Virus record (IMG/VR): IMGVR_UViG_3300022921_000002
Location: 62,001 to 126,000 of that record
Length of the DNA: 64,000 nt
Direction: 5' to 3' (one strand)
Positions within the stretch are counted from its first letter, which is position 1. Every line of letters starts with the position of its first letter. Made by a program: the position numbers and the translations under genes. Under the pieces are notes generated by a model, which had not been told where the DNA came from, made no database searches, and saw only the letters and a list, made by a program, of their open reading frames with translations. Shown here piece by piece: positions 15,274-29,438 of the stretch.

Positions 15274-15939
15274 TTAGGATCCTTTCTTATAAGTCGACTT
15301 TGTGTCAATTGCTACGTAATATGTAGCTTCATTACCTTTGAACTCAGAGATACCTTTACTTGAAAGCGTAACTTTGTAGTCCTGAGGTAGGAGTTTCAAA
15401 TTATCAGTCTTGATGATAATTTTGAATGTGTCGGGTGTTACACCGATTTCTACACCATAATCATCAGCTCTTTCGCTAGATGAGTCAATGGCTTTAAGAT
15501 AGCATTTGCCATCTTGTCCAACAAATGCAACTTCAGAGAACTGAAGCACACCTGCTGCTTTCACCACTGATTGGATATCTTCCCACGATACCGCCACTTC
15601 AACGTCAGCGTCTGTGATCTGAATTTCTTTCTCAGGTGGTGTATGAATCATAGAGATATCAGCAAACGCATAACGTGTGCGCTGTTTACCTTCTGTGATA
15701 ATAAAGTATTTATCATGGAATTCTACATCCGGATTTGAATGAAGTGACAAAATTGATAGAAATCTTGACAAATCATAGATACAAGCCTGTGATGGAATTT
15801 GATCTGGAATTGTTGCTGATGCAAGCAATGTTTTCTCAGGTGTGATTGTTTTCAATACACTACCTGGTTGCATCAAAATTGATTTATTAATAGTAGAGAA
15901 ACTCTTCAGAATAGTCAGAGTACGGTCAGAAAATTGCAT
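15274..15939 (-). CDS. gp45: Sliding clamp gp45
   Basis: MQFSDRTLTILKSFSTINKSI, IYDLSRFLS, NLKLLPQDYKV. Confidence 0.95.
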   Translation of the reverse strand: MQFSDRTLTILKSFSTINKSILMQPGSVLKTITPEKTLLASATIPDQIPSQACIYDLSRFLSILSLHSNPDVEFHDKYFIITEGKQRTRYAFADISMIHTPPEKEIQITDADVEVAVSWEDIQSVVKAAGVLQFSEVAFVGQDGKCYLKAIDSSSERADDYGVEIGVTPDTFKIIIKTDNLKLLPQDYKVTLSSKGISEFKGNEATYYVAIDTKSTYKKGS

Positions 15940-15962: not shown

Positions 15963-16856
15963 TTATCTGTTTATTTTATTACGCTTTTGCCTTTTTGTCA
16001 ATGGCTTTTTTGCTTTTTGAGATGTTTTATCAGCAGTTAGTGGTGCACCGAGTGAACCGATGTGTGCCATTGAACCTTTGAATACATATGCTCCAATATG
16101 TTGCAACTGCATCCATGGGCAAGTCCAAATTCTTAATCCAATATCACGTGCTTTACGGCAGAAGAAGTAATCTTCCGATAGATACCGTTTTGATACTGGG
16201 TCAATCATACAATCAAAGAATGCGTGGATCATTGTTTTACCATCAAAGTTTTCAGTACGAACATGGTCAGGTTTATAACTCATCTCAGGATATGCTTCTT
16301 TCCATTTAATAAGTGTTTCACGTGGGATGAGCATAAATCCTGTACCTGCTTCTGCAACCTCCATTGGTTCACCGACATTAAATGTTGCCTGTCCTTGAAC
16401 CGGGTTCATAACATAATCAGCAGTATAGTTTTCTAATTCAAACGGATCTTTATCAGCACGACCTTCTTTGGCAGCACGTGCTACCTTTTCCCAAGCAATT
16501 GTTTTCTTTGGGTAAGGACCTGTTACGATATTATAATTCTCAGGATCTGAAATGTTAACCGCAAGCATTGCAAGAATATCTTTTGCATTGAAACCAATAT
16601 CAGAATCAATAAAGACCATGTGGGTGCATTCTGACCTTAGGAATTCATCAACACAATAGTTACGTGCTCGCTGTACAAGGCTTTCATTAAACAAATAATA
16701 AAACTTTACGGTGATGCCATTTGCAGCACACATCATAGCCAAATCTGTTGAAGCCTTTGTATATGAGCCAGCACATTGGGCACCATACATCGGACTTGCT
16801 ATGAAGAGGGAAAACTTTCGTAATTCCTCAACTGTTACTTCTATTTTATTACTCAT
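15963..16856 (-). CDS. GT-A fold (GT2-like) glycosyltransferase
   Basis: ESLVQRARN, DxD motif FIDSD, GTGFMLI, YLSEDYFFC, H in LQHIG. Confidence 0.75.
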   Translation of the reverse strand: MSNKIEVTVEELRKFSLFIASPMYGAQCAGSYTKASTDLAMMCAANGITVKFYYLFNESLVQRARNYCVDEFLRSECTHMVFIDSDIGFNAKDILAMLAVNISDPENYNIVTGPYPKKTIAWEKVARAAKEGRADKDPFELENYTADYVMNPVQGQATFNVGEPMEVAEAGTGFMLIPRETLIKWKEAYPEMSYKPDHVRTENFDGKTMIHAFFDCMIDPVSKRYLSEDYFFCRKARDIGLRIWTCPWMQLQHIGAYVFKGSMAHIGSLGAPLTADKTSQKAKKPLTKRQKRNKINR

Positions 16857-17479
16857 ATCATCTCCATATCATTTTCAGCTCGATGGATTGCCTGCAAACG
16901 CATAACATCCGCAAGAATATCCCATGAGCTATCGTGTTCTTTAAAATTATTTTCCCACACTTCTGTACTATTGATTGGACAAAAACCATTGATCTTTGGG
17001 AAATCCAATTTTGCATCAATATAAGTACGTGTATCTCGTATTCTCCAAAACTTTAGGTATTCTTCCATGTGTAGAAGTTTGTTTTGTGATTTAAACAAAC
17101 GACCTAGAATAATAGGATCAAACGTATTTGATCTTGACCACCAATATGTAATGTTTGGTTGGCTAATCAAATAATCCATAAACTCTGAACAGAACATTTC
17201 AACAGTTAAATCATTGGGTGTTGGTTTGATATGCCTACGCACCTCAGGACCTAGTGACTCCCACCAATTAACTGTTGATGCATCAACTTCATATCCATAC
17301 TTTTTAACCTGATTAACAACATCAAGTTTAAACCGTTTTGCTTTTACAACATCGTTGAAGTTGTATGGCTCATCAAGAAACTTATCCCAATTGAATACCA
17401 TAACCGAACAGTCGATTACAGCACATTTATTAGCATCCTTTCCGAATGTTTCGAAGTCAATTATAAGATCGTTTCTCAC
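16853..17479 (-). CDS. dexA: DexA-like 3'-5' exonuclease (DEDD)
   Basis: IIDFET, WSRSNTFD, WRIRDTRT, HDSSWDILAD. Confidence 0.8.
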   Translation of the reverse strand: MRNDLIIDFETFGKDANKCAVIDCSVMVFNWDKFLDEPYNFNDVVKAKRFKLDVVNQVKKYGYEVDASTVNWWESLGPEVRRHIKPTPNDLTVEMFCSEFMDYLISQPNITYWWSRSNTFDPIILGRLFKSQNKLLHMEEYLKFWRIRDTRTYIDAKLDFPKINGFCPINSTEVWENNFKEHDSSWDILADVMRLQAIHRAENDMEMI

Positions 17480-18699
17480 GCAAAGAACTCCTCTAATGTA
17501 GGTTGATTACTTGTACCTCGGACATCCATTTCTGTCTTTTCAGTATGATTATTCTGACGCAAATAGTTTGTTTCAGACATAGGTAGTTCACCGTTAAGGA
17601 ATTTTGCAATCTGCAAGTGCATATCACGAGATGTTGGTACAGGAACATTTTGGGCAATGTGGTTCATAGAAGTCATTCCATTAAGCAACTCAAAATCATC
17701 AGGGAAACCCATCAAATACAATGCTTCACGGATTGTTAGTGAACGGTCATAGTGCGGATGTACTGTGTCTGCAAGGTTACGTCCAATAACAGCATTCATA
17801 CAATCATCAAACACATGGACTGATGCATCCCAAACGCCCAAACCTTGAGCAAACTTTTTGATGGCATGGTCAGTTACGTGTATCCCACGTGTATGTCCTG
17901 TCTCGTGCATCCATTTATTTGCCTCTTGAATTTTACCTGATTTGTTTACATATCCAAATGCCGTTGCCGCAATCTCACGGATAACTTGACGTGCTGTCAT
18001 ATTTGATCCTGGTGGTAGCATTGCTTCAACAAAATTATAATAAGGTTCATCCATTAGGTTTTTGTTTACAATCAAATCTTGGTGTAGTGCATCATCTTTG
18101 ACATCGTTTACATATTCATCAAATCTACGACGTGGGCGTTTATGCCAATCCATAATAGGTGCAGTTTCTGATTTCCAACCAATAGCAAAGGTACGGTCAC
18201 GTGCTTGTGGAATACCATGATATTTTGTTGATGTTTTATATAATGTCATACTATAACCTGCTTTGCTGCAAATGTCAAATAGTTTATCTGCTACAGGTCG
18301 ACCTTTATTAGTAAATAGTGCAGGAGCGTTTTCAACAATAATAGCTTTGGCTTCAAACCTATTAATACCTTCTTTAAAAACTTCGTACATCCATTCGTTC
18401 TTTTCACAACCTGCACCTTTTGCGTCAGGCGCTTTTGCAGTATTCAATTGTGACAATGCAGCACAAGGTGGTGTACCGCTGACAACATCAAGTGATCTTT
18501 TTGCGGCTTCAGGAATCATTGTATAGGCAATATCTCGACCTTTTGTTACATTCTGATAGTTAACATAGTGACTATCGTTTGCTCCAAAGTCAGGATAGGA
18601 ATAGATTGTTTCAGGTGGCTTGCCGAATGCTTTTTCCGCTCCTAGCATTTGACCGCCGATTAGTGGAATGATTGGAGCCCAGGTAATTTCTTTGTTCAT
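17476..18699 (-). CDS. C5-cytosine DNA methyltransferase-like protein with atypical motif I
   Basis: PPC (IV), VENAP (VI), PQARDR (VIII), LTIREALYLMGFPDDF (IX), IAQNVP (X); motif I reads IIPLIGG. Confidence 0.8.
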   Translation of the reverse strand: MNKEITWAPIIPLIGGQMLGAEKAFGKPPETIYSYPDFGANDSHYVNYQNVTKGRDIAYTMIPEAAKRSLDVVSGTPPCAALSQLNTAKAPDAKGAGCEKNEWMYEVFKEGINRFEAKAIIVENAPALFTNKGRPVADKLFDICSKAGYSMTLYKTSTKYHGIPQARDRTFAIGWKSETAPIMDWHKRPRRRFDEYVNDVKDDALHQDLIVNKNLMDEPYYNFVEAMLPPGSNMTARQVIREIAATAFGYVNKSGKIQEANKWMHETGHTRGIHVTDHAIKKFAQGLGVWDASVHVFDDCMNAVIGRNLADTVHPHYDRSLTIREALYLMGFPDDFELLNGMTSMNHIAQNVPVPTSRDMHLQIAKFLNGELPMSETNYLRQNNHTEKTEMDVRGTSNQPTLEEFFA

Positions 18700-18712
18700 A
18701 ATATATCCTTAT

Positions 18713-19975
18713 TTAAAAAAATGCTTCGAGTGTTGCTGGTTTTTGAACTTCATATCCAGTTAAATCAGGTCTCTTATAGTTACTGTCAAATGCGGTGAAG
18801 ATTTTATCATTAATAAAACTACCATCATAATATTCAGGTTTAAGAACAGCTTTACGCAATTCGTAGATTGTTTGCTCATATGCCAATTTGTTATCAATAA
18901 GATATTGAAGATTTTTATGGAATTCTTCAGGTGTTTTTGGGCGCAAGATCTCAGGAATAGGTGTGTGACCTTGCATATCATATGACGGATGTAAGAATGG
19001 AATAACACCAGCATGGATCATTTCAATATACTTTGACGTTACCCAACCTTCTTTAATAGGAATGATAAATGTAAACTTAACATCCTGTAGTTTGTTCTGC
19101 AATTGTTTTAAATGCATTGATCCTTTAAAACGATTATCTCCTTTTGCATTATTACCCCATTTGCCATAGATCTCAACATCATCAAATTTGTCGAGTACCC
19201 ATTCCTTCAGGAGTTTATAACGTGATGGTTTGCCTTCATTAAGAACAACCATGAAGTCAGTGTTACGATTAGTATTTACTTCTTCTGTATATTCGTAATC
19301 AACACAGAATGCTGTTTCCATTGCAGCGTATTCACAGTTAACAGGAATGTCTTGCCGTGATTGATCTTCAATGCTTTTAATTGGATGAGCAGTATAGGTA
19401 TAGTCATATTGGCTCAAACCTTTAAACGGTAGGTGCATAAAGTCACGTGCTTGCCGCATTGTGTATCGAGGATCATTGATAACTTCAACATAATGTGGCT
19501 TACATTCATTTAGCCAAAAAGTCAACGGTGTAACATACCATTTTGTCATATCAAGAACAAATGCTGGTTTGCCATCATCGTTTTCTTCACGAACCTTTTT
19601 CATCTTTTCGGGAATACTTACGTTACCGATTTGACCTACCATCATTACCGTGGCATCAAGCGTGATATTATTTTCTTCAAAATATGTTTTAATCCACCAA
19701 AAATACCGATCAGTTGGTACTCTTTCAATTTTCATTTCTGCCCAAATATCAATAACATTATTATAAGGAAACAGATCTGCTTTATCCGTTTCAGTTAATG
19801 AAGCGAAGTCAGATCTTCCTACAATATAAAATATTTTATCAGGGTTGTTGTTTGCAATAGCACGAAGAACACAAGATGCCTCATTGTCACCACCGACAGG
19901 AGAATATTTGTTTGTCCTTAGCTTTACTGATTTACCAATTTTGGCAAAGGCAATATGTTTCATAATTAAGTCCAT
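18713..19975 (-). CDS. GT-B glycosyltransferase, T4 beta-glucosyltransferase-like (putative hmC sugar transferase)
   Basis: MKHIAFAKIG N-terminus, DVEIYGKW, KFTFIIP...TSKYIEMIHAGVIPFLHPSYD; next to sugar-activation genes. Confidence 0.6.
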   Translation of the reverse strand: MDLIMKHIAFAKIGKSVKLRTNKYSPVGGDNEASCVLRAIANNNPDKIFYIVGRSDFASLTETDKADLFPYNNVIDIWAEMKIERVPTDRYFWWIKTYFEENNITLDATVMMVGQIGNVSIPEKMKKVREENDDGKPAFVLDMTKWYVTPLTFWLNECKPHYVEVINDPRYTMRQARDFMHLPFKGLSQYDYTYTAHPIKSIEDQSRQDIPVNCEYAAMETAFCVDYEYTEEVNTNRNTDFMVVLNEGKPSRYKLLKEWVLDKFDDVEIYGKWGNNAKGDNRFKGSMHLKQLQNKLQDVKFTFIIPIKEGWVTSKYIEMIHAGVIPFLHPSYDMQGHTPIPEILRPKTPEEFHKNLQYLIDNKLAYEQTIYELRKAVLKPEYYDGSFINDKIFTAFDSNYKRPDLTGYEVQKPATLEAFF

Positions 19976-20328
19976 TCCATAGTTTTAACGAATTGCTCGG
20001 GAGTTATTGCTTTATCGTCAATATAGTAAACACCGTATGGTTTACCCCAAACAATTTCATCATAAGGAACGTCGTACTTTTTTAGCCAATCGACTGTAAT
20101 CTGTCCGACGTCTTCAATAATTTTATTTATGTCACCGCCATGAGTTAACATTCTGCGTGCTGTATGTAGCACAATCCGATAACCTTTTGACTTTGCCTTT
20201 TGCAGACTTTTAATCATAGGTTCATTTGGTAGAGCCATAGCATACTTCTGTTCTGATTCTTTTTGGTTATGTCTAGGGTAACATATAGTATCGTCTATGT
20301 CAACTACAATTGTTTCTTGCGTACTCAT
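19966..20328 (-). CDS. HAD-family phosphatase (capsule biosynthesis EcbF/BcbF-like)
   Basis: VVDIDDTI, LHTARRM, VPYDEIVWGKP, YYIDDKA. Confidence 0.85.
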   Translation of the reverse strand: MSTQETIVVDIDDTICYPRHNQKESEQKYAMALPNEPMIKSLQKAKSKGYRIVLHTARRMLTHGGDINKIIEDVGQITVDWLKKYDVPYDEIVWGKPYGVYYIDDKAITPEQFVKTMEWT

Positions 20329-21775
20329 TAATATAATCTCTCATTCTTTGTTGTCTGTCTTCGCAGTCATAATGAAGTTTAATACAAGTTGCGATTAACA
20401 GTGCACCGCCATCTATGATTTCGTCATAATCATTAGGAAAGTACTCTTTAATTAATTCAGAAAAACATTCCCGAACCGCTGTGGGGTATTTATGCCCCGT
20501 AACTAGTTCGTTATATCCATGATATAGGTCGTGTGACAATTTGCACATATCATAAAGGTAATCACCACCGATACCTATATAATCACCATAAGATCCTCGT
20601 GGATCCAATAATGTAAAAGCATCATTATATGGGTTATACAGAATGTTGCCAAAGTGCAAATCACCGTGCATAGCATCAACAGGTTTTGCCTTTTTCAGAC
20701 AGCGTTCCGCAACATTTCGGTAATACGGACTATCAGTTTCTAATCGTTCTTCTGTTTTATCAATCCACATCTTTTTTGCATTGTCAGGAAAATTGGCAGT
20801 AAACTCAAGAGTTGGCTTACGATGAAAATGGTTTGACATTGTAACTATAACTCTTTCAATCAAATACCGTATAGTACTTTTTGATATGTCCTCATGAGCA
20901 AATAGATCAGATAGCAGAATGCCTGACTCATAGGACATGGTCAGGGAATAATCATCTTTTAATACTTTAGGAATGAGCATGCTTTGAATAGGTGACAGTG
21001 ATGTATACCAATTCTTTTCATTCATAATAGTTCTTGTGGCAAAACTGTTATTTGCATTTGGAATCTTTGTAATCATATTGAGATCGGCATGATATTCAAA
21101 CGAATTAAACTCACGTGCCTTTAGTGTCAACAATGTAGCACAAGTTTTATGGTATGAGGCAATATCACCAATATCATACCACAATTCTGTACTTACGTTA
21201 TTAAAGTTACCATAATCTTCAAGTGCATCCGAGATATCATATCCTTTGCTATCACAAAAAGCAATGGATGCAGTTTGACCACACTTAAAGCTGTATAGAC
21301 CTACGAGTGCGGTTGCGTTATCAATGTTTTCTTTTGGTTTATTGTAATATTTTTCACCATCCCACATACACCAAGCAAAGTGATCTTCAACTTGTTTTGT
21401 TAAAAGGAAGTCTGTACCCAACGGCATATTTTCTTCAAGGATAATTGCGTCACCCAACCAAACAACAAGAGGACATTCCCAATTACCCAAATTTTCAATA
21501 CCAACAGCAATAGCGTCACGAGGTCCATTTAGTGATCCTTGTTTTACACATTTAATATTTTTATATTTTGATTTTTCAACCCAGTCACGAATATCATTAT
21601 GCTTACCATCAACAATAACGATCTGCCCAACTTGATCAGCATTCTTATAAATTGATTCAATAATATATTCAATAGTAGGTTTACCGTGGACACGGATCAT
21701 AGCCTTGCTACAATTTGCTGTTAGCGGTTTAAGGCGTGTTGCTTCTCCTGCCGCTGGTATCACTACATTTATCAT
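20300..21775 (-). CDS. Fused sugar nucleotidyltransferase plus APH/choline-kinase-like domain
   Basis: N-terminal IPAAGEATRL, WLGD, WYDIG; C-terminal HGDLHFGNIL, LDPRG. Confidence 0.8.
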   Translation of the reverse strand: MINVVIPAAGEATRLKPLTANCSKAMIRVHGKPTIEYIIESIYKNADQVGQIVIVDGKHNDIRDWVEKSKYKNIKCVKQGSLNGPRDAIAVGIENLGNWECPLVVWLGDAIILEENMPLGTDFLLTKQVEDHFAWCMWDGEKYYNKPKENIDNATALVGLYSFKCGQTASIAFCDSKGYDISDALEDYGNFNNVSTELWYDIGDIASYHKTCATLLTLKAREFNSFEYHADLNMITKIPNANNSFATRTIMNEKNWYTSLSPIQSMLIPKVLKDDYSLTMSYESGILLSDLFAHEDISKSTIRYLIERVIVTMSNHFHRKPTLEFTANFPDNAKKMWIDKTEERLETDSPYYRNVAERCLKKAKPVDAMHGDLHFGNILYNPYNDAFTLLDPRGSYGDYIGIGGDYLYDMCKLSHDLYHGYNELVTGHKYPTAVRECFSELIKEYFPNDYDEIIDGGALLIATCIKLHYDCEDRQQRMRDYINEYARNNCS

Positions 21776-22409
21776 AATTTAATCTCCACTCGTCGTATTC
21801 ATCTTCAAGGTTAACCCATTGTGGTTTACATAGACCTGACCAACTATGTCTCTTGTCCCAAACAAACCACGCATATGCAATCATACCACCAATCTGATGT
21901 TTCTTTTCAATCGGCTCAATAGAATCCTTTTTGAATTGAACTCGGTCCGATAAAAATATTATATCACTAGGAGGGTGGTTTGTAAACAACTTTTTTCGTT
22001 TTTTTCCTTCTAAAAAGGTTAAACGTAGAAACATTGCTACATAATCATATTCACCTATCCATTTTTCCGCCATCTTTCGTGGTAAGTCTTTATGATATGG
22101 TGGGTTTGTCACTACTCCATCAAAACCTGTTGGCTTTTGCAATTCCATTGCGTCATAAGAAGTATTTATGCTACATAAAGAATCGGAATATTCATTGAGA
22201 TCATAACTTAAAACATTGTGACCATTCCGCGCAAGCTCAACCGAAATGTTACCACGACCTGCGCATGGTTCAACTATATCTCTTGGTGGTTTACAATACT
22301 TTGTGAGAACGAATGTTGCAAGTGGAGGTGTTGGGTAAAAATCATTCGTTCTTCGGTTAGGGTCATCTTTCTTGACCCCAACATAGACATCGGTTAAACT
22401 ATTAGCCAA
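21729..22409 (-). CDS. N6-adenine (or N4-cytosine) DNA methyltransferase
   Basis: DFYPTP, EPCAGRGNI, VVTNPPY. Confidence 0.85.
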   Translation of the reverse strand: MANSLTDVYVGVKKDDPNRRTNDFYPTPPLATFVLTKYCKPPRDIVEPCAGRGNISVELARNGHNVLSYDLNEYSDSLCSINTSYDAMELQKPTGFDGVVTNPPYHKDLPRKMAEKWIGEYDYVAMFLRLTFLEGKKRKKLFTNHPPSDIIFLSDRVQFKKDSIEPIEKKHQIGGMIAYAWFVWDKRHSWSGLCKPQWVNLEDEYDEWRLNYDKCSDTSGRRSNTP

Positions 22410-22905
22410 GGTGTGTTACCAAAATACCTGCCTCTTTAAACATAGGCGCAGATTGCGTGGTCCATAAGTCAACCCATTTCTCGGGTGTGTTGTATGTTGC
22501 TTCGCGGATTACAACTCGGCGAATACCGGATTGAATAATAAGTTTAGTACAGTCAGGACACACTGGCAATCCGTGGACATATATTGTTGCATTCTTTAAT
22601 GAAACACCAGAATACAAAGCATTCATCAAAGCATTAGTTTCCGCATGGACAATCCGTGGGTATTTTTCATCTCGGTTTTCTAAACGCTCAATACTATCTT
22701 CAATACCTTTTGGAAAACCATTATAACCAGTAGCAAGAATACGTCGTTCGTCATTTACACAAACAGCACCAATCTGACTCGACGGATCTTTACTCCATTT
22801 AGAAATTGTTTCAGCCAATTCCATAAATCGCTTATCCCATTTGAGTTGACGTTCATCTTCCTCACGGTATTTTCGACTTATAAATCTATCATATGGTTCT
22901 TGCAT
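22402..22905 (-). CDS. cd: dCMP deaminase
   Basis: SKDPSSQIGA, GYNGFPKG, HAETNA, PVCPDC. Confidence 0.92.
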   Translation of the reverse strand: MQEPYDRFISRKYREEDERQLKWDKRFMELAETISKWSKDPSSQIGAVCVNDERRILATGYNGFPKGIEDSIERLENRDEKYPRIVHAETNALMNALYSGVSLKNATIYVHGLPVCPDCTKLIIQSGIRRVVIREATYNTPEKWVDLWTTQSAPMFKEAGILVTHLG

Positions 22906-24143
22906 TACATACCTCGAATAGCAATAGTTGAATTTAAACCACCAAACGCAAAGTTATTACTGATTGCAACATCAACCTTCTTTTCCTTTGCGGTATTTGG
23001 TACGACGTCAAGATCACATTCAGGATCAGGTTCTTCATAATTAATTGTTGGTGCAATAATGCCATCGTTTACTGCCATAATTGCCGCAAGTAATTCAACT
23101 GCACCTGTTCCGCCAATACAATGTCCGTGCATAGATTTGGTTGAACTTACACTCAATTTATGAGCATGGTCACCGAATGTTTGTTTGATAGCATCAATTT
23201 CAGTTCTATCATTTGGAACTGTGCCTGTACCATGAGCATTTATATAATCAACTTGTTCTGGGTTAATTGATGCATCTTTGAGGCATTTTTTCATTGATCT
23301 AATCAATCCTGAAACTTCAGGCATCACAAGATCACTTGAGTCTGCAGTACACGCCGCACCTAATACTTCACAGATGATATTTGCACCACGATTTTTAGCA
23401 TGCCAATATTCTTCAAAGACAAATACACCTGCGCCTTCACCGTGAACAATACCTTGACGCCCAAGAGAAAACGGTCGACAGTAACCTGGGCTTACAACGC
23501 GCAAACCTTCCCATGCTTTCATTCCTGATAGATTTAGAATTGCTTCTGAACCACCTGTCAGCATAACAGGAGCCATACCGTATTTAACCATATGGAATGC
23601 TTGTGTCATTGCGTGGTTAGCAGAAGCACATCCTGACGTTACAGTAAATGATGGACCTTTGATATTATGTTCCATTGAGATATGGCAAACAGGAGCATTA
23701 CCCATAACACGTGGAATAATAAAAGGATTAGCACGGCGTTTTGGATTATCAGATGCAAAGTAATTATGATATGTCCGTTCCCAGGTTTCAGCGCCACCAC
23801 TACCGTTACCCATAATAATACCTGCTTCCTCAGCAAGTTCACCATCAAATTCTAAACCTGATTGTTCTACTGCCTCGCGGGCTGCAAGTATATTGAGTTG
23901 TGTAAACCTATCAAAGATTGCAATTTGCATTCTTGTCCAATGGTCTTTTTCATCATAGCCTTTAATTTGGCCACCACGAGTGTAGCGCATATTTTGAATT
24001 TCTATGATGTTTTGGAGTTCGCTAATGCCGTCGGTGCCTTCGGCCATTGCTTTCATTGTATCTTGGGCAGTCCATCCTAAAGAATTTATAGTGCCCATGC
24101 CTGTAATAACAACACGGTTAGTCTGTCTTGTTGAGCTCATCAA
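22905..24143 (-). CDS. fabF: Beta-ketoacyl-ACP synthase II, FabF/NodE-like
   Basis: RVVITGMG; catalytic Cys in TSGCASANHA; His in INAHGTGT and KSMHGH; NNFAFGG; KAWEGLRV segment typical of NodE-like paralogues. Confidence 0.93.
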   Translation of the reverse strand: MMSSTRQTNRVVITGMGTINSLGWTAQDTMKAMAEGTDGISELQNIIEIQNMRYTRGGQIKGYDEKDHWTRMQIAIFDRFTQLNILAAREAVEQSGLEFDGELAEEAGIIMGNGSGGAETWERTYHNYFASDNPKRRANPFIIPRVMGNAPVCHISMEHNIKGPSFTVTSGCASANHAMTQAFHMVKYGMAPVMLTGGSEAILNLSGMKAWEGLRVVSPGYCRPFSLGRQGIVHGEGAGVFVFEEYWHAKNRGANIICEVLGAACTADSSDLVMPEVSGLIRSMKKCLKDASINPEQVDYINAHGTGTVPNDRTEIDAIKQTFGDHAHKLSVSSTKSMHGHCIGGTGAVELLAAIMAVNDGIIAPTINYEEPDPECDLDVVPNTAKEKKVDVAISNNFAFGGLNSTIAIRGM

Positions 24144-24321
24144 TTAATGTTTTCCTTTTTTCACTACCCATTGCTCCATCAAAAAGTGATTTGGCAGAAG
24201 TCATAAGACAACTGCCGAGCATTAGGATTTCTTCATTATCATCACACATCATAATAAGCCGATCTAATTCAGAATTAAAATAAGTCATTCTTTTTACAAC
24301 GTGGCGTGCGGAATGTGGCAT
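24118..24321 (-). CDS. Hypothetical protein
   Basis: 67-aa ORF coupled to its neighbours. Confidence 0.5.
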   Translation of the reverse strand: MPHSARHVVKRMTYFNSELDRLIMMCDDNEEILMLGSCLMTSAKSLFDGAMGSEKRKTLIDELNKTD

Positions 24322-24593
24322 TACTCTTCAACAAGCTCCACTGAAATAACTTTCTTTACTTTAATACCATCCCACCGATCCTTGCGGATATCGTAACAAC
24401 CAGTATGAGAAGGTGTCAACACAGGTGGATTGTTTATGCGGCCGCGCTTGTTTGGCATATCAGGAATTAGTTCAGGCTTGAGTGTGTAATGCTTACTGCG
24501 TGTACCAGTTTTATCATTACGTTCCCAGGTGACAAGGCATTCGCCTTCCTGTAATTTAGCTTTAAATGCTGCTTTACTCCATGTCCCTAGCAT
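24321..24593 (-). CDS. WYL-like/Sm-like small protein
   Basis: KLQEGECLVTW...YTL...YDIRKDRWDGIKVKKV resembles the DUF2693/WYL_2 pattern. Confidence 0.45.
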   Translation of the reverse strand: MLGTWSKAAFKAKLQEGECLVTWERNDKTGTRSKHYTLKPELIPDMPNKRGRINNPPVLTPSHTGCYDIRKDRWDGIKVKKVISVELVEE

Positions 24594-24810
24594 CGGATTC
24601 TCCTATCATTCGTTTTTCCATATTTTCTTTTACGTCCATTACTTTTTCATTTTCAATTATATTAATAATGATATTAGTAATGTCTAAATCTTTTTGTAGG
24701 AAAGACATTTTGGTTTTTATTTTTTCAATCTGTGCTCGATAAAATTCAAGCTCTTTTTCTTTTCTGAGTTTTGTCTCGATAACATCTGATATTCGTATTA
24801 ATTTACTCAT
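24574..24810 (-). CDS. Coiled-coil hypothetical protein
   Basis: 78 aa, heptad-rich. Confidence 0.55.
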   Translation of the reverse strand: MSKLIRISDVIETKLRKEKELEFYRAQIEKIKTKMSFLQKDLDITNIIINIIENEKVMDVKENMEKRMIGESDARDME

Positions 24811-24818
24811 GGATATAT

Positions 24819-25517
24819 TTATACAACAAGATCAAAATGACGTTCGTATACGTGCAAGTTCATCACTTGCCATGTCAGCATGCCTTTTTCAATAGTAAAG
24901 TGTTTATTACCAGGAAGCTCACAACGGCTGTTCCATCGAGTAACAAGTTGATCCATTAGGTATTGAGCCCATGCGTAATCATTCTTGTAACCAAATACAA
25001 CATCATTAGAACGCATTTGCGATACCATATGTAGAATACCATCACGGATATAGAATGTTTGAGCGTTGGTACAAATGAAATCAGACTTACCGTTTTCATC
25101 AAACTCAACCCAGATAGATGGACGATTGTAAACCATTTGAGCACGACGGCTGTCAGGATTACGCCACAGTTCATCAAAAGCATTTTCAAATTGATTGAAA
25201 TACTTTGGTGAATTTACAAGGTGACCGTAGTTTGAATTGATTTCACCGTTTGGATCAGCAGCATATTGCCATGCCGCAGGTGGTTCTTTAGATGGTCCGT
25301 AAATATCATTAATATTTGTTGAACCTGATTTGTACCATTCCAATTCTGATTCAATATAACTTTGACTTGGTTTACCAAAGATTGCTGGTTCAGTTGCAAG
25401 AAAGTTTGCACCGATTAATTCAATAGTACGTTGGCCTGTTTTATCAATAGTGAATGCTTCATCTTTAAGCTCACCTTTGAAAAACTCACGGATATCATAT
25501 ACGCTATCAATTCTCAT
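24819..25517 (-). CDS. gp42: dCMP hydroxymethylase (T4 gp42 family)
   Basis: DKTGQRTIELIGANF, ELEWY, GEINSNYG, NPDSRR, DFICT, MRSNDVVFGYKNDYAW (Asp at the dCMP-specificity position), LHVYERHF. Confidence 0.93.
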   Translation of the reverse strand: MRIDSVYDIREFFKGELKDEAFTIDKTGQRTIELIGANFLATEPAIFGKPSQSYIESELEWYKSGSTNINDIYGPSKEPPAAWQYAADPNGEINSNYGHLVNSPKYFNQFENAFDELWRNPDSRRAQMVYNRPSIWVEFDENGKSDFICTNAQTFYIRDGILHMVSQMRSNDVVFGYKNDYAWAQYLMDQLVTRWNSRCELPGNKHFTIEKGMLTWQVMNLHVYERHFDLVV

Positions 25518-26014
25518 GCGAATGTCCTTTTATAGTTTGACTTGTCTATTTCTTTAATTCTATTATACAACGGTTCGTTATTAATGTCAATAATTTTATT
25601 AAATGTTTCGAGCGCAAATCCTGCGGTATGCCTATTGTCTCGTTTGTTTTGAATAACTCTAAACCTACGTTGACCAGGTGGAGGTGCTTCCCATAATGTA
25701 ACAAGCTTTGATCCAGGCCGTGGGTTTTGAACAATAATCCATCGGTCGGCATTTAAACACTTATCAAGTTGATTACTTACGGCACCACCTTTAGTTGTTG
25801 TAATCGGAACAGTAAATGCCTCATACGTTTCCATGTTAGGTACTTTAAAATGGTAATAAATTGTTTGGAATTTAACTTCGGCATGTCTGCCGTCAATCAT
25901 CATATCCTTTGACATATCAAACGGATCTTCCGACATTTCAACTTTGCAATTTTGCATTTCAAAGTATTCTTTTACAATACGTTCACCTAATTTACCTAAC
26001 CGTTCTATGCTCAT
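25514..26014 (-). CDS. PD-(D/E)xK nuclease-like protein
   Basis: GKLGERIV...D-MMIDGRHA-EVK pattern. Confidence 0.55.
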   Translation of the reverse strand: MSIERLGKLGERIVKEYFEMQNCKVEMSEDPFDMSKDMMIDGRHAEVKFQTIYYHFKVPNMETYEAFTVPITTTKGGAVSNQLDKCLNADRWIIVQNPRPGSKLVTLWEAPPPGQRRFRVIQNKRDNRHTAGFALETFNKIIDINNEPLYNRIKEIDKSNYKRTFA

Positions 26015-26322
26015 TTTTTAAACCTATCATCAGTATCAATTGGATCAGACTCAATTGTTGTCATAACAAGAATCATCATTTGAGTTAAGGCATGAGACAA
26101 ATGTGGCAAACCTGATTCAGGATCTTGATCTTCACCTGACATATATGCTAACAAATGACGCTGAATAGATGAGTAATGACGAGAGACAGGAAACTTTTCA
26201 ATGTCTTGTCGCCAATTGTTTTCACCGTACTTTTCAGCACCAAAACCAAATACCTTTGCTGCTTCGATAATAGCTTCAGGTGGAACTAAATGGATTTTGG
26301 GTTTGTCATTATCATACTTCAT
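26011..26322 (-). CDS. DUF5664 dATP/dGTP diphosphohydrolase-like protein
   Basis: KYDNDKP, GAEKYGENNW, RHL, DPESGLPHLSHA. Confidence 0.88.
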   Translation of the reverse strand: MKYDNDKPKIHLVPPEAIIEAAKVFGFGAEKYGENNWRQDIEKFPVSRHYSSIQRHLLAYMSGEDQDPESGLPHLSHALTQMMILVMTTIESDPIDTDDRFKK

Positions 26323-26842
26323 TACGAGAGCCTCTGCCTTTTATTTGAGAATTGAGTAGTGGCTGATAATGGTCAATAGATGCATCTTCAATTAATGGAG
26401 CAATCTTTAAGTCATAATCAGCGGTGTTAATGTATTTTATCACAACATCCATAGTTTGTAAACCATTTTCTTTTAGATATTGTCTATATTTTCTACCTGT
26501 TACTTCATGGTGTGAGTCAGGTTTAGTAAACGAACTGCGGTGATTGCCTATCCGTGCATGGATTGAAGAAGTCTTACCATCCGTTTTGCCAATATAAAGT
26601 ATTTTACCTGTGGATTTTTCTTGCCACATATAAACACCTTTATGTTCAAATGCAGCTATGCGCCTACCGTGATTACAGCGACGCAATGGAGTTACAATAT
26701 CAGCTTTATATTCTGTCTTATAACCATGCTCTATGATTTGTAAACAGACTTCACCGTATTCTATGGCTTCCTCCCAATACTCTTCAATATTGGAAAGAAT
26801 TTTATCTTGCAGCAAAGCCGCAAGGTCATCAAGTTTTGACAT
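26312..26842 (-). CDS. GIY-YIG endonuclease
   Basis: GVY...LYIGKT, conserved R (HARIGNH), E (LIEDA) and N (PLLN). Confidence 0.8.
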   Translation of the reverse strand: MSKLDDLAALLQDKILSNIEEYWEEAIEYGEVCLQIIEHGYKTEYKADIVTPLRRCNHGRRIAAFEHKGVYMWQEKSTGKILYIGKTDGKTSSIHARIGNHRSSFTKPDSHHEVTGRKYRQYLKENGLQTMDVVIKYINTADYDLKIAPLIEDASIDHYQPLLNSQIKGRGSRNEV

Positions 26843-28292: not shown

Positions 28293-28394
28293 ATGAAACT
28301 AAAGTATAGAATCAAGTTCTTTATGTCTAAATTAAAGTTTTGGAAAAAAGGAAGTTACGGTAAAGGTACGTTCATCTACGAAGATGATGATTAG
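28293..28394 (+). CDS. 33-aa basic peptide with acidic tail
   Basis: MKLKYRIKFFMSKLKFWKKGSYGKGTFIYEDDD; strong SD GGAGGAG; upstream AATAAATA late-like box. Confidence 0.55.
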   Translation: MKLKYRIKFFMSKLKFWKKGSYGKGTFIYEDDD

Positions 28395-28986
28395 GTTCAT
28401 AATTAAATGTTTTGATATCTCTTTCATACCAATCTCCTATATCATTTATAAGCTTAGGAGTCCAAAGATTAGGGTAATCGCCTGTGACATTATACTTTTC
28501 TTGTAGTTCAACGCTGAAATAGTTTTTTACATCTTTCTTTAAAGTCTCAGTTTTCATCACATGGCACATTATTTTCCCATCATCGTTAGTAATGTGGTCT
28601 AATTGATTATGCCAATGAAGATGTGGTCTGTGCCATGTGAACGGCATTTCTATAAGTCTGTGCCTATCTTCAATAAATGCCTCAAAGCTTGAAAGATCAG
28701 TACCATGAACCTCATAATCTCTTGTCTTTGCATGCCAATAGCGAGAAGCTGTTCTCTGCCATGGATTTCTTACAACAGCAAATGCTTCAAACTTATCTCT
28801 ATATTCTGGGTAAAGGTCTTTCCATCTACTATGCTCAGCTCCTGGATATCCAATAACTTTTAAGCCCTGAATATAATCATAGTCTTTTAATTTATCTACA
28901 GTGTTAATGATAATTTGAGACTTTAGTGCGTTGCAATATCTTATAGAGAACCCACCTGTCTTTGGAATATGAATAAAAATTTTCAT
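28372..28986 (-). CDS. Sulfotransferase (Sulfotransfer_2 family)
   Basis: PAPS-binding motifs FIHIPKTGG and VRNPWQR. Confidence 0.85.
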   Translation of the reverse strand: MKIFIHIPKTGGFSIRYCNALKSQIIINTVDKLKDYDYIQGLKVIGYPGAEHSRWKDLYPEYRDKFEAFAVVRNPWQRTASRYWHAKTRDYEVHGTDLSSFEAFIEDRHRLIEMPFTWHRPHLHWHNQLDHITNDDGKIMCHVMKTETLKKDVKNYFSVELQEKYNVTGDYPNLWTPKLINDIGDWYERDIKTFNYEPNHHLRR

Positions 28987-29438
28987 AATCTATATACTGC
29001 GTATGCATTTTCTCCGTGTTTAAATGTCATCCACTCAGTCATACGAATGAACCCAAACTCTTCAGCATGAGAAAATGTAGGCCTACGAGGTAAACACCAT
29101 AAAAACTCACAACCTTCTCTTCTTCCTTGGTCTGCCACAGCTTGCCACATTATTTGAGATAACTTTTGTCTTCTATAATCTTCATCTACCCACACTCCAC
29201 GTCCTCTATAATAAGTTTCTGAAGTCTTGTGTCCTGAGTTTGAAGCTATAAGTTTATCTCCGTCATACAAGCCCCAGTAGGTGGCTTTATATTTTGTAAA
29301 TATTTCTTTATTGTTTCCAAGTTCAGGAAAAGTCATATCAGAAATATAATAGTGCTCATTCCCAGGCCACAACTTGTCCCAGGCTTCTTTAATCTGTTCT
29401 TTGGTTATTTCTCTAAGCTGATAATTCTGCATAGTCAT
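28983..29438 (-). CDS. GNAT acetyltransferase
   Basis: RGVWVDEDYRRQKLS acetyl-CoA motif. Confidence 0.8.
   Translation of the reverse strand: MTMQNYQLREITKEQIKEAWDKLWPGNEHYYISDMTFPELGNNKEIFTKYKATYWGLYDGDKLIASNSGHKTSETYYRGRGVWVDEDYRRQKLSQIMWQAVADQGRREGCEFLWCLPRRPTFSHAEEFGFIRMTEWMTFKHGENAYAVYRL

What the first reader, a model, noticed from the sequence alone, without database searches (positions are those of the whole stretch)
15963..26842. Complete, non-T4 cytosine hypermodification locus
Seen: a gp42-family enzyme with the dCMP-specifying Asp (GYKNDYAW), dCMP deaminase, a BGT-like GT-B enzyme, a GT-A enzyme, a kinase-nucleotidyltransferase fusion, a HAD phosphatase, a Dcm-like protein, a DUF5664 pyrophosphatase, DexA and two nucleases, all in one minus-strand run. 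Known: T4 makes hmC with gp42 and glucosylates it from host UDP-Glc, whereas RB69-like phages encode their own sugar activation and use arabinose. Inference: this phage makes its own non-glucose donor, so its DNA probably carries an uncharacterised sugar on hmC (or hydroxy-C).
Basis: partly seen in the sequence, partly recalled or inferred. Interest (0 to 1): 0.72.

Follow-up and report, generated by a model that had tools for sequence, protein, structure and literature searches.

The report
Clamp-linked glycosyl-hydroxymethylcytosine DNA modification island
A large marine T4-like phage carries a gene island that most likely replaces cytosine with hydroxymethylcytosine and then attaches a sugar made by the phage itself, and its sugar-adding enzyme and a neighbouring methylase-like enzyme both end in the same short tail that the phage DNA polymerase uses to hold the sliding clamp.

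Summary
The thymidylate-synthase homologue is a T4 gp42-type dCMP hydroxymethylase: 47% identical to gp42 and 26.5% to the RB69 5-hydroxy-dCMP synthase. It keeps the catalytic Cys, has Asp for Asn177 and Asp for Leu143, and retains Asp169, which is Asn in hydroxy-C makers. The base is therefore hmC, not hydroxy-C.

The 420-aa protein folds like T4 beta-glucosyltransferase. The kinase-nucleotidyltransferase fusion and the small HAD phosphatase are distant homologues of the RB69/HY126 AfhE/AfhF donor-making pair. No arabinose-5-phosphate isomerase is present, so the sugar stays unknown.

The island is syntenic in 80 or more environmental phage contigs, and some of them have swapped donor modules.

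New here: the GT-B enzyme, the C5-methyltransferase-like protein (always beside it) and the DNA polymerase are the only three proteins in the 221-kb genome that end in TLExFF, the polymerase's clamp-binding tail type.

The GT-A gene, DexA and the two weakly supported "nucleases" are not shown to belong to the pathway.

Verdict: a new variant of a known kind.

The parts
24819..25517 (-). T4 gp42-type dCMP hydroxymethylase (5-hm-dCMP synthase), 232 aa
   Evidence: PF00303 and phrog_160. 47% identity to T4 gp42, 26.5% to RB69 gp48. Catalytic Cys in SDFICTN, Asp for Leu143, RSND keeps Asp169, NDYAW has Asp for Asn177. All environmental relatives examined keep RSND..NDYAW.
26011..26322 (-). PF18909 (DUF5664, MazZ-like) nucleotide pyrophosphohydrolase, 103 aa; proposed dCTP-clearing enzyme
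   Evidence: PF18909 E 1e-28, phrog_801. 88-93% identical in relatives and next to the hydroxymethylase. Substrate not tested. No T4 gp56 homologue in the genome.
22402..22905 (-). dCMP deaminase, 167 aa
   Evidence: PF00383 E 4e-22, phrog_174 E 6e-49. Feeds ThyX, found at G000:169239-169823.
20300..21775 (-). Bifunctional sugar-1-phosphate nucleotidyltransferase (N-terminal) and APH-type kinase (C-terminal), 491 aa; AfhE-like
   Evidence: PF00483/PF12804 over residues 4-115 and a weak ABC1 hit at 346-391. Matches RB69 gp53 (31% over 72 aa) and the kinase catalytic loop of RB69 gp52 (35% over 57 aa). Distant RmlA/GlmU/GalU/MurU-type hits.
19966..20328 (-). Small HAD phosphatase, 120 aa; AfhF-like
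   Evidence: 26% identity over the full length to RB69 gp51, E 2e-10. phrog_1238 E 1e-22 and TIGR01689 capsule-biosynthesis phosphatase E 2e-22.
18713..19975 (-). GT-B DNA glycosyltransferase candidate, 420 aa, T4 BGT-like fold; the C-terminal PATLEAFF (18716-18739) is a polymerase-type clamp-binding tail
   Evidence: AF2 pLDDT 79.6; top six PDB hits are T4 BGT. Tail motif found in only three proteins of the genome and conserved in about 73 of 81 relatives. Complex model with the gp45 trimer contacts residues 412-420 (weak support).
17476..18699 (-). C5-cytosine methyltransferase-like protein, 407 aa; the C-terminal PTLEEFFA (17479-17502) is the same clamp-type tail
   Evidence: PF00145 at 78 bits, TIGR00675. 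Motifs PPC, ENAP, PQARDR, RSLTIREA..MGFP and QNVPVP are conserved, while motif I reads PLIGG instead of FxGxG. Adjacent to the GT in 81 of 81 loci, including Pseudoalteromonas phage XG4. Tail present in 71 of 72 relatives.
21729..22409 (-). NPPY-motif DNA methyltransferase (N6-adenine or N4-cytosine type), 226 aa
   Evidence: phrog_799 E 1e-40; only weak Eco57I/UPF0020 Pfam hits; the sequence shows VVTNPPY. Present in many relatives but not all.
15274..15939 (-). gp45 sliding clamp, 221 aa; proposed docking platform
   Evidence: PF09116 E 1e-15. 32% identity to T4 gp45.
15963..16856 (-). GT-A fold glycosyltransferase, 297 aa, invariant DSD; acceptor unknown and probably not part of the hmC island
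   Evidence: Foldseek hits are all GT-A. Atlas neighbours carry Anp1/GT2. Conserved beside gp45 in Cr30, phiM12-group and DLP_6 phages; GT420 and C5MT searches of the phage collection hit none of them, and the DLP_6 locus has neither.
16853..17479 (-). DexA-type 3'-5' exonuclease, 208 aa
   Evidence: PF16473 E 4e-14 and phrog_255. 32% identity to RB69 DexA, E 8e-24.
22905..24143 (-). FabF/NodE-like beta-ketoacyl-ACP synthase, 412 aa; a recent insertion and probably an auxiliary metabolic gene
   Evidence: PF00109+PF02801 and TIGR03150, E 7e-123. 58-59% identical to marine Rhodobacteraceae proteins. Present only in the nearest relatives. No ACP gene in the genome.
24118..24810 (-). Three small ORFs (67, 90 and 78 aa) travelling with the ketoacyl synthase insertion
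   Evidence: o24118 co-occurs only with the synthase; o24321 and o24574 also occur in a few synthase-less relatives (L028, L030, L035, L040, L056). No informative family hits.
25514..26014 (-). 166-aa protein of unknown function; PD-(D/E)XK nuclease is only a lead
   Evidence: No Pfam hit and a weak phrog_6927 hit. One Atlas neighbour cluster carries PDDEXK_16, at rank 95.
26312..26842 (-). GIY-YIG-like protein, 176 aa
   Evidence: Sub-threshold PF09517 (Eco29kI, a GIY-YIG enzyme) at 20.7 bits against a cut-off of 30.8. The sequence shows GVY...YIG...R...H. No similarity to T4 SegA or SegF.

Best explanation
The locus is a two-stage cytosine hypermodification island of a marine or estuarine T4-like phage.

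Stage 1, before replication:
- The PF18909 pyrophosphohydrolase is proposed to return dCTP to dCMP.
- The gp42-type enzyme converts dCMP to 5-hydroxymethyl-dCMP.
- A gp1-family dNMP kinase encoded elsewhere in the genome, plus host NDP kinase, make hm-dCTP for the polymerase.
- dCMP deaminase and ThyX cover dTMP.

Stage 2, on DNA:
- The AfhE-like enzyme phosphorylates C1 of a sugar phosphate.
- The AfhF-like HAD enzyme removes the distal phosphate.
- The nucleotidyltransferase domain makes an NDP-sugar.
- The BGT-like GT-B enzyme transfers that sugar to the hydroxymethyl group of hmC in duplex DNA.

The GT and the adjacent C5-methyltransferase-like enzyme are proposed to be recruited to newly made DNA through a C-terminal TLExFF tail that docks on the gp45 clamp, as the polymerase's own tail does.

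Shown: gene identities, diagnostic residues, fold, synteny and motif distribution. Inferred: every enzymatic step, the dCTPase role, the sugar, clamp docking, and what the C5-methyltransferase-like enzyme does. The default guess is SAM-dependent methylation of cytosines that escape replacement.
For: - hmC synthase: 47% identity to T4 gp42 with all four diagnostic positions of the hydroxymethylase type (criteria from PMC13326640).
- Supporting nucleotide genes: PF18909 protein, dCMP deaminase, dNMP kinase phrog_139 at E 2e-29, ThyX at E 2e-43.
- Donor module: same domain architecture as RB69 gp52:53 and gp51, with detectable homology. The AfhE/AfhF biochemistry is described in PMC13326640.
- GT: best structural matches are T4 BGT.
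- Functional linkage: TS, HAD, NT-kinase, GT and C5MT travel together in 80 IMG/VR loci and in the unrelated-looking Pseudoalteromonas phage XG4 record.
- Donor genes are swapped in sister lineages while GT and C5MT stay. L051 and L062 carry a HAD+APH fusion plus an RfaE-domain-II-like nucleotidyltransferase.
- Clamp tail: only C5MT, GT420 and the gp43 homologue end in the motif, against 0.125 expected per genome from shuffles.
- The tail aligns with T4 gp43's ASLDFLFG clamp-binding end.
- The motif is conserved behind a variable linker in relatives and matches the polymerase tails of three other genomes.
- T4 alpha-GT is known to bind gp45 (PMC13216743).
- Complex prediction of the gp45 trimer with GT residues 386-420: weak support, score 0.53 against a best control of 0.01. 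The mark was reached by 51 of 78 solved complexes and 2 of 108 mismatches. At 0.60 or under it was reached by only 5 of the 78 solved complexes and by all 4 mismatches that passed. Contacts were residues 412-420.
Against: - No chemistry was measured.
- PF18909 family members are named dATP/dGTP pyrophosphohydrolases, so dCTP specificity is assumed, and the gene is missing from some relatives' loci.
- A C5-methyltransferase has no substrate on fully hmC-substituted DNA, so either replacement is incomplete or the enzyme does something else.
- The GT has no sequence-level match to any characterised DNA glycosyltransferase.
- The HAD enzyme's best curated match is a capsule-biosynthesis phosphatase. 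The genome holds other sugar-nucleotide genes as well: GalE-like, KdsB-like and dTDP-glucose-dehydratase-like. The donor module could therefore serve a non-DNA target.
- The XG4 homologues lack the tail.
- The complex score is in the range where passes are often wrong, and it may reflect memory of the RB69 clamp-peptide structure.
Confidence: 0.62

Rival explanations
1. Mosaic modification. Replacement of C by hmC is incomplete, and the clamp-tethered C5-methyltransferase methylates the remaining cytosines behind the fork. Virion DNA would then carry glycosyl-hmC plus 5-methylcytosine. This refines the best explanation rather than excluding it.
For: - The C5MT-like protein keeps the catalytic motifs PC, ENx, QxRxR, IX and X and scores well above the PF00145 cut-off.
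- Its 30%-identical relative in cyanophage S-TIM5 stands alone with no GT nearby, as an ordinary methylase would.
- There is no gp56-type dCTPase.
- The PF18909 gene is absent from some relatives' loci.
Against: - Motif I is PLIGG instead of FxGxG, and the motif III acidic residue is not conserved across the family, so SAM binding is not assured.
- Strict adjacency to the GT, even in phage XG4, suggests a closer functional tie than an independent methylase would have.
Confidence: 0.3
2. RB69/DLP3-type system: arabinose, or another sugar, attached by an ether bond to 5-hydroxycytosine.
For: - AfhE-like and AfhF-like genes are present.
Against: - The TS homologue keeps Asp169 (RSND), whereas every tested 5-hydroxy-dCMP synthase has Asn there (PMC13326640).
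- It is 47% identical to gp42 and 26.5% to RB69 gp48.
- No arabinose-5-phosphate isomerase or SIS domain is in the genome.
- No homologue of the RB69 arabinosyltransferases was found.
Confidence: 0.04
3. hmC is made, but the kinase-nucleotidyltransferase, the HAD enzyme and perhaps the GT-B act on a non-DNA target such as a host envelope or capsule glycan. The DNA would then carry plain hmC, or glucosyl-hmC made from host UDP-glucose.
For: - The HAD enzyme's best curated hit is a capsule-biosynthesis phosphatase.
- The genome carries many envelope-type auxiliary genes: KdsB-like, GalE-like, sulfotransferase, LpxO-family hydroxylase-like and a ketoacyl synthase.
- The GT-A neighbour also has no known acceptor.
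Against: - The GT's closest fold is a DNA glucosyltransferase.
- Its polymerase-type clamp tail makes sense only for an enzyme that works on DNA.
- The donor genes are wedged between the GT and the nucleotide-metabolism genes in 80 loci and in XG4. This is the same layout as the proven RB69 DNA-arabinosylation cluster (PMC13326640).
Confidence: 0.1
4. The C5-methyltransferase-like enzyme is not a methylase. It uses its C6-attacking cysteine on hmC or glycosyl-hmC to exchange or extend the C5 substituent, giving a further, undescribed cytosine derivative.
For: - Invariant catalytic Cys and Glu with an altered cofactor motif I.
- Obligate pairing with the GT across two phage lineages.
- A shared clamp tail.
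- From my own knowledge, not a tool result: bacterial C5-methyltransferases can add or remove C5 hydroxymethyl groups and couple thiols to hmC in vitro.
Against: - There is no precedent in nature.
- The S-TIM5 relative lacks a GT partner.
- Motif differences could simply be subfamily variation.
Confidence: 0.08

Closest known systems
T4 hydroxymethylcytosine and glucosylation pathway (gp56, gp42, gp1, Cd, alpha-GT, beta-GT)
   Same: - A gp42-type hydroxymethylase with identical active-site signature.
- dCMP deaminase.
- A gp1-family dNMP kinase.
- A GT whose fold is closest to beta-GT.
- A GT-clamp link has precedent in T4 alpha-GT binding gp45 (PMC13216743).
   Different: - No gp56; a PF18909 pyrophosphohydrolase stands in its place.
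- No sequence homologue of alpha-GT or beta-GT.
- The phage encodes its own NDP-sugar route, whereas T4 uses host UDP-glucose.
- ThyX replaces Td.
- A C5-methyltransferase-like partner is present.
- The clamp tail is of the polymerase type. T4 alpha-GT and beta-GT do not end in this motif.
RB69 / DLP3 / HY126 arabosyl-5-hydroxycytosine clusters (Afh genes; PMC13326640)
   Same: - A thymidylate-synthase homologue next to a HAD phosphatase, a kinase-nucleotidyltransferase fusion and GT-B enzymes, in the replication-gene region of a T4-like phage.
- The same logic for making the donor.
   Different: - The base is predicted to be hmC, not 5-hydroxy-C (Asp169 kept).
- No arabinose-5-phosphate isomerase.
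- No TMPK-like kinase.
- The GT is unrelated in sequence to the RB69 gp3 and gp46:47 enzymes.
- Afh homology is remote, 26-35% over parts.
Pseudoalteromonas phage vB_Psh_XG4 (PP712099, unannotated record)
   Same: The closest isolate. It has the TS (hmC-type RSCD..NDLAW), HAD, NT-kinase, GT (42% identity) and C5MT-like protein (46% identity) in the same order.
   Different: - It has a gp56-like ORF and an extra 368-aa GT-like ORF between GT and C5MT.
- Its GT and C5MT lack the TLExFF tail.
- No modification data were found in the literature searches made, none of which named XG4.
Shewanella phage Thanatos pentosyl-cytosine system (PMC12838424)
   Same: A marine T4-like phage with a TS homologue next to a 561-aa nucleotidyltransferase-phosphotransferase fusion.
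   Different: The Thanatos TS homologue produced 5-hydroxy-dC in the in vivo assay of diverse TS homologues carrying the Asn169 signature (PMC13326640). Its transferase has not been identified. No sequence comparison was run here.
Phage methyltransferase-TET-glycosyltransferase pathways (PMC8256090; bioRxiv 10.1101/2023.12.21.572611)
   Same: A C5-cytosine methyltransferase and a DNA glycosyltransferase encoded side by side.
   Different: No TET/JBP dioxygenase in this genome (though the control genomes did not ring either). hmC is supplied here by a thymidylate-synthase homologue before replication.

Membership tests
T4 gp42-type dCMP hydroxymethylase | Thymidylate-synthase fold with catalytic Cys (E. 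coli ThyA Cys146) | tested here: met
   PF00303, E 1.5e-13. SDFICTN aligns with T4 SDFMCTN.
T4 gp42-type dCMP hydroxymethylase | Asp at the ThyA Asn177 position (dCMP specificity) and an acidic residue at Leu143 | tested here: met
   NDYAW and SDFIC align with the T4 gp42 residues. Criteria from PMC13326640.
T4 gp42-type dCMP hydroxymethylase | Produces 5-hydroxymethyl-dCMP from dCMP and methylene-tetrahydrofolate | not testable with these tools
   Needs an enzyme assay or in vivo expression followed by LC-MS.
5-hydroxy-dCMP synthase (RB69 gp48 type) | Asn at the ThyA Asp169 position | tested here: not met
   The window protein and all relatives read RSND. RB69 gp48 reads RSQN.
Afh-type arabinosylation system (RB69/HY126) | Bifunctional kinase and NDP-sugar pyrophosphorylase (AfhE) plus HAD phosphatase (AfhF) | tested here: met
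   Same architecture and weak but significant pairwise matches.
Afh-type arabinosylation system (RB69/HY126) | Phage arabinose-5-phosphate isomerase (SIS domain) | tested here: not met
   tblastn with RB69 gp55 found nothing. PF01380 and PF13580 are absent, with positive controls ringing.
Afh-type arabinosylation system (RB69/HY126) | Homologues of the RB69 arabinosyltransferases gp3 and gp46:47 | tested here: not met
   No tblastn hit in the genome.
T4 beta-glucosyltransferase family (PF09198) | Sequence membership in the family | tested here: not met
   No Pfam family at E 0.01 or better. No tblastn hit with T4 b-gt. No PDB sequence hit with a profile.
T4 beta-glucosyltransferase family (PF09198) | BGT-like GT-B fold | tested here: met
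   Top six Foldseek PDB hits are T4 BGT, E 5e-9 to 3.5e-7, TM 0.51-0.65, sequence identity 10-11%.
DNA (cytosine-5) methyltransferase | Catalytic motifs IV (PC), VI (ENV), VIII (QxRxR), IX and X | tested here: met
   PPC, ENAP, PQARDR, RSLTIREA..MGFP and QNVPVP are invariant or nearly so in 10 relatives. PF00145 at 78 bits.
DNA (cytosine-5) methyltransferase | SAM-binding motif I FxGxG and motif III acidic residue | tested here: inconclusive
   Motif I is PLIGG, with the first Gly replaced. The candidate motif III Asp varies among relatives. The single-sequence PDB alignment does not cover residues 1-68.
gp45 clamp-binding proteins of T4-like phages | C-terminal hydrophobic tail like that of gp43 (T4 ASLDFLFG) | tested here: met
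   TLEAFF and TLEEFFA against the polymerase's TLEDFFG. Only these three proteins in the genome carry it. It is conserved in relatives and matches their polymerases.
gp45 clamp-binding proteins of T4-like phages | Physical binding to the clamp | tested here: inconclusive
   Complex prediction gave weak support, 0.53 against a best control of 0.01. A pull-down is needed.
Beta-ketoacyl-ACP synthase II (FabF) | Two KAS domains and the curated family score | tested here: inconclusive
   PF00109+PF02801 are strong. TIGR03150 scores 410 bits, below its 494 cut-off. PRK07314 scores 386.4 against 387. Nearest relatives are named NodE-like.

The most novel reading that the evidence does not exclude
Replisome-coupled double modification. 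The GT-B enzyme and the C5-methyltransferase-like enzyme both ride the gp45 clamp through a polymerase-type tail, and together they produce a cytosine derivative not yet described. That derivative could be a new sugar on hmC combined with 5mC, or a further C5 substitution made by a methyltransferase-fold enzyme acting on hmC. This would be happening in an abundant clade of marine and estuarine T4-like phages.
Probability: 0.2. Interest if true: 0.8.

Novelty: new variant of a known kind. Interest (0 to 1): 0.6.

Why it matters
Glycosylated hmC (T4) and glycosylated 5-hydroxy-C (RB69, DLP3) are the two known routes to sugar-coated cytosine. This island combines the T4 base with the RB69-style self-made donor, in uncultured phages that are common in salt-marsh and seawater samples. 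It therefore predicts a third combination and probably new glycans, because sister lineages swap the donor genes or add a second GT.

The shared polymerase-type tail gives a simple, testable mechanism for how DNA-modifying enzymes keep pace with replication. It also offers a sequence tag for finding other replisome-coupled modification enzymes in T4-like phages.

The obligate C5-methyltransferase-like partner is unexplained on fully substituted DNA. It is the most likely place for new chemistry.

Such modifications determine resistance to restriction enzymes and CRISPR nucleases, and they explain poor nanopore base-calling of environmental phage DNA.

Tried and rejected
- Megablast of the whole interval against 50,697 phage records found no match.
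- tblastn of T4 gp56, alpha-GT, beta-GT and Dam, and of RB69 gp3, gp45, gp46, gp47, gp50 and gp55, against the whole genome found nothing.
- T4 gp1 by tblastn gave only E 0.95. The kinase was later recovered by a PHROG profile.
- TET/JBP (PF12851) was absent, but the control genomes did not ring either, so this is a weak negative.
- ACP (PF00550) was absent with good controls, so the ketoacyl synthase would have to use a host ACP.
- A PDB sequence search with the GT profile gave no hit.
It was redone without that row.
- I considered that the GT-A gene belongs to the pathway. I rejected this as unsupported, because it is a fixed neighbour of gp45 in phages that lack the island at that place.
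- I considered that the ketoacyl synthase takes part in the modification. I rejected this because it occurs only in the closest relatives, and at a different place in L044/L046/L049.
- Public sequencing runs hold the locus only as Illumina assemblies. Three metatranscriptome assemblies contain it as 7-18 kb flat-depth contigs, which shows presence and not transcription. No raw nanopore reads were available to look for base-calling errors at C.
- Literature searches found no paper describing this island or a clamp-tail motif on DNA-modifying enzymes.

Full report
**Setting**

The window is bases 62001-126000 of a 221,447-bp IMG/VR virus record judged complete. T4 core replication genes are present: gp44, gp45, regA, gp43, gp46/47, uvsX, gp41, gp61 and gp55. 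It is therefore a large T4-like phage with about 37% G+C. Near-identical DNA is found in salt-marsh and seawater metagenomes. The interval 15963-26842 lies in a long minus-strand run directly downstream of the sliding-clamp gene.

**Checking the observation**

- The 232-aa protein (24819-25517) matches thymidylate synthase.
- The 167-aa protein is a dCMP deaminase.
- The 491-aa protein has an N-terminal sugar-phosphate nucleotidyltransferase domain and a weak C-terminal APH/ABC1-type kinase signal.
- The 120-aa protein is a HAD phosphatase.
- The 407-aa protein is a C5-cytosine methyltransferase family member, 78 bits against a cut-off of 22.
- The 103-aa protein is PF18909, formerly DUF5664.
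- The 208-aa protein is 32% identical over its length to RB69 DexA.

The two proteins without sequence-family hits were folded.

- The 420-aa protein (pLDDT 79.6) has T4 beta-glucosyltransferase as its six best PDB matches.
- The 297-aa protein (pLDDT 66.6) matches only GT-A enzymes and has an invariant DSD.

The two "nucleases" are weak calls. One is a GIY-YIG-like pattern with a sub-threshold Eco29kI hit. The other has only a PD-(D/E)XK lead.

**Which base?**

A 2026 study showed that RB69-type phages do not make hmC. They make 5-hydroxy-dCMP with a flavin-using thymidylate-synthase homologue, and Asn at the ThyA Asp169 position marks those enzymes (PMC13326640).

- The window protein reads MRSNDVVFGYKNDYAW. 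T4 gp42 reads MRSNDVVFGFRNDYAW and RB69 gp48 reads MRSQNCAVVMQLDF.
- It therefore keeps Asp169, has Asp for Asn177, has Asp three residues before the catalytic Cys (the Leu143 position), and keeps the Cys.
- It is 47% identical to gp42 and 26.5% to gp48.
- All environmental relatives examined, and phage XG4, keep the same signature.

The predicted product is 5-hydroxymethyl-dCMP.

A gp1-family dNMP kinase (phrog_139, E 2e-29) and ThyX lie elsewhere in the genome, so a T4-like nucleotide route is plausible. No gp56 homologue exists. The PF18909 protein beside the hydroxymethylase is the candidate dCTP-clearing enzyme, but that is an assumption.

**Which sugar?**

The HAD protein is 26% identical over its full length to RB69 gp51 (E 2e-10). 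The 491-aa protein matches RB69 gp53 at its nucleotidyltransferase end and the catalytic loop of gp52 at its kinase end. In HY126 and RB69 these are AfhF and AfhE. They convert arabinose-5-phosphate via the 1,5-bisphosphate and the 1-phosphate to UDP-arabinose (PMC13326640). The same three activities are therefore predicted here.

The phage lacks the arabinose-5-phosphate isomerase that feeds the RB69 route. tblastn and two SIS-domain searches, with positive controls, were negative. The substrate must be a host sugar phosphate, and its identity cannot be read from sequence. Host arabinose-5-phosphate from the Kdo pathway is not excluded.

T4 needs none of these genes, because it uses host UDP-glucose. 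Their presence beside the GT supports a phage-specified donor.

**Comparative evidence**

A scan of IMG/VR with the GT returned 95 relatives, of which 80 were kept. The order gp44, gp45, GT-A, DexA, C5MT, GT, HAD, NT-kinase, (N6-methylase), dCMP deaminase, hydroxymethylase, (PF18909) recurs at 57-100% protein identity.

Three variations are informative.

- A sub-clade (L051, L062, L065, L067) lacks the NT-kinase fusion. Instead it has a HAD domain fused to an APH-like kinase, plus a separate RfaE-domain-II-like nucleotidyltransferase. The three activities are kept with different parts, which suggests a different donor.
- L044-type contigs and phage XG4 have an extra 368-377-aa ORF between GT and C5MT. 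The XG4 copy has weak glycosyltransferase hits, which suggests a second sugar.
- The ketoacyl synthase occurs only in the nearest relatives, and two of its three small companion ORFs also turn up in a few relatives that lack it. Its closest cellular homologues are NodE/FabF-like proteins of marine Rhodobacteraceae at 58-59% identity. No ACP gene is present. It looks like a recently acquired auxiliary gene, and it gives a hint about the host.

The only isolate with the module is Pseudoalteromonas phage vB_Psh_XG4, whose record is unannotated.

**The GT-A gene**

Its homologues sit next to gp45 in Caulobacter phage Cr30, the Sinorhizobium phiM12 group, Stenotrophomonas phage DLP_6 and others. 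Searches with the GT and the C5MT-like protein hit none of these phages. In DLP_6 the neighbourhood contains no C5MT, GT-B or thymidylate-synthase homologue. It is a fixture of the replication module in this wider phage group, not a part of the hmC island. Its acceptor is unknown.

**A shared tail**

The C5MT-like protein ends in ...QPTLEEFFA and the GT in ...KPATLEAFF. A scan of all ORFs found only one other protein with such an end, an 844-aa ORF ending ...NTLEDFFG. That ORF is the gp43 DNA polymerase homologue, aligned end to end with T4 gp43, whose last residues are ASLDFLFG. By established T4 and RB69 biochemistry, cited here from my own knowledge, that tail is what binds the gp45 clamp.

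- A stricter pattern is expected 0.125 times per genome from shuffled proteins and is seen three times.
- The motif is conserved in 71 of 72 C5MT relatives and about 73 of 81 GT relatives. It follows a variable linker, as short linear motifs do.
- In three other genomes of the clade the polymerase ends in TLESFFV, SLESFFM or TLESFFM, while the GT and C5MT end in TLEDFFA/TLEEFFA or TLADFFV/TLEGFFV.
- T4 alpha-glucosyltransferase is known to bind gp45, whereas beta-GT does not (PMC13216743). Neither T4 enzyme ends in this motif.
- A complex prediction of the gp45 trimer with GT residues 386-420 gave weak support: score 0.53 against a best control of 0.01. That mark was reached by 51 of 78 solved complexes and 2 of 108 mismatches. 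At 0.60 or under it was reached by only 5 of the 78 solved complexes and by all 4 mismatches that passed. The confident contacts were residues 412-420. The pass may reflect likeness to the solved RB69 clamp-peptide complex.

I take the motif evidence as good and the binding as inferred.

**The C5-methyltransferase-like protein**

It is beside the GT in 81 of 81 loci, including XG4, whose homologues lack the tail. It keeps the catalytic PC, ENx, QxRxR, IX and X motifs. Its motif I is PLIGG rather than FxGxG, and the motif III acidic residue is not conserved.

On DNA in which every C is hmC it would have no substrate. Two readings follow.

- The simple reading is that replacement is incomplete and the enzyme methylates the remaining cytosines at the fork. 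A 30%-identical relative in cyanophage S-TIM5 stands without any GT, as an ordinary methylase would.
- The bolder reading is that it acts on hmC or glycosyl-hmC.

No TET enzyme was found, so the methylase-TET-GT route does not apply. The control genomes did not ring for that search either, so this negative is weak.

**Verdict**

The base is hmC rather than hydroxy-C. A phage-made donor and a BGT-like transferase are well supported by homology, fold and synteny. The sugar is unknown, and no step has been measured.
- The island is best filed as a new variant that joins the T4 base pathway to an RB69-style donor pathway.
- It has two features not described in the papers I could search: a polymerase-type clamp tail on both DNA-modifying enzymes, and an obligate C5-methyltransferase-like partner.

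Noticed in passing
window 22905-24143 (with small ORFs 24118-24810): An intact-looking FabF/NodE-like beta-ketoacyl-ACP synthase sits inside the DNA-modification island. It is 58-59% identical to marine Rhodobacteraceae proteins. No ACP gene is in the phage and there is no true phage homologue in the isolate collection. A 30%-identical synthase sits elsewhere in L044, L046 and L049, beside a class I methyltransferase.
   Followed up: partly
window 28372-36211: A run of auxiliary-looking genes lies just upstream of the island: sulfotransferase (PF03567), GNAT acetyltransferase, Asp/Asn beta-hydroxylase-family protein (the family of lipid A hydroxylase LpxO), class I methyltransferase, PP-loop/QueC-like protein and a radical SAM/SPASM enzyme. 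Together with the NodE-like synthase they resemble a lipid or glycan decorating set.
   Followed up: no
window 51745-52434, window 57689-58573, and G000:174819-175841: Further sugar-nucleotide genes lie elsewhere in the genome: a KdsB-like CMP-Kdo synthetase, a GalE-like UDP-glucose 4-epimerase and a dTDP-glucose 4,6-dehydratase-like SDR. They could tailor the DNA sugar donor or remodel the host envelope.
   Followed up: no
G000:173380-174141 (L097:53-814): A 253-aa ORF matches only positions 147-394 of 5-aminolevulinate synthase (E 2e-104). It is either a truncated gene or a start lying upstream of the fetched stretch.
   Followed up: no
L094/L095 (record G001, 170402-173930): In a 201-kb relative with terminal repeats the DNA polymerase gene is in two pieces about 0.9 kb apart. 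Each match is reported with one TAA inside. This could be an intein, an intron, a homing-endonuclease insertion or a split polymerase.
   Followed up: no
L051:8357-9979 and L062:8487-9976: Sister lineages replace the NT-kinase fusion by a HAD+APH-kinase fusion (344-348 aa) and an RfaE-domain-II/TagD-like nucleotidyltransferase (144-147 aa). The GT and the C5MT-like gene are kept.
   Followed up: partly
L044:11262-12395 and L084 (phage XG4):4238-5344: An extra 368-377-aa ORF lies between the GT and the C5MT-like gene. In XG4 it has weak GT47 and Glyco_trans_1_2 hits, so it may be a second glycosyltransferase. XG4 also has a gp56-like ORF at 7022-7552, judged by its N-terminal sequence only.
   Followed up: partly
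L044:6860-7411: A redoxin/AhpC-family gene lies between the hydroxymethylase and the dCMP deaminase in one sub-clade.
   Followed up: no
window 17476-22409: The locus is present at 98-99% of sampled words in many 2018 salt-marsh and seawater metagenomes. It also appears as 7-18 kb contigs in three metatranscriptome assemblies. This shows presence only and does not prove transcription.
   Followed up: partly
G000:205610-206035 (L088:211-636): A 141-aa P-loop kinase (phrog_10255, E 3e-29; weak thymidylate-kinase hits) is a possible second nucleotide kinase.
   Followed up: partly
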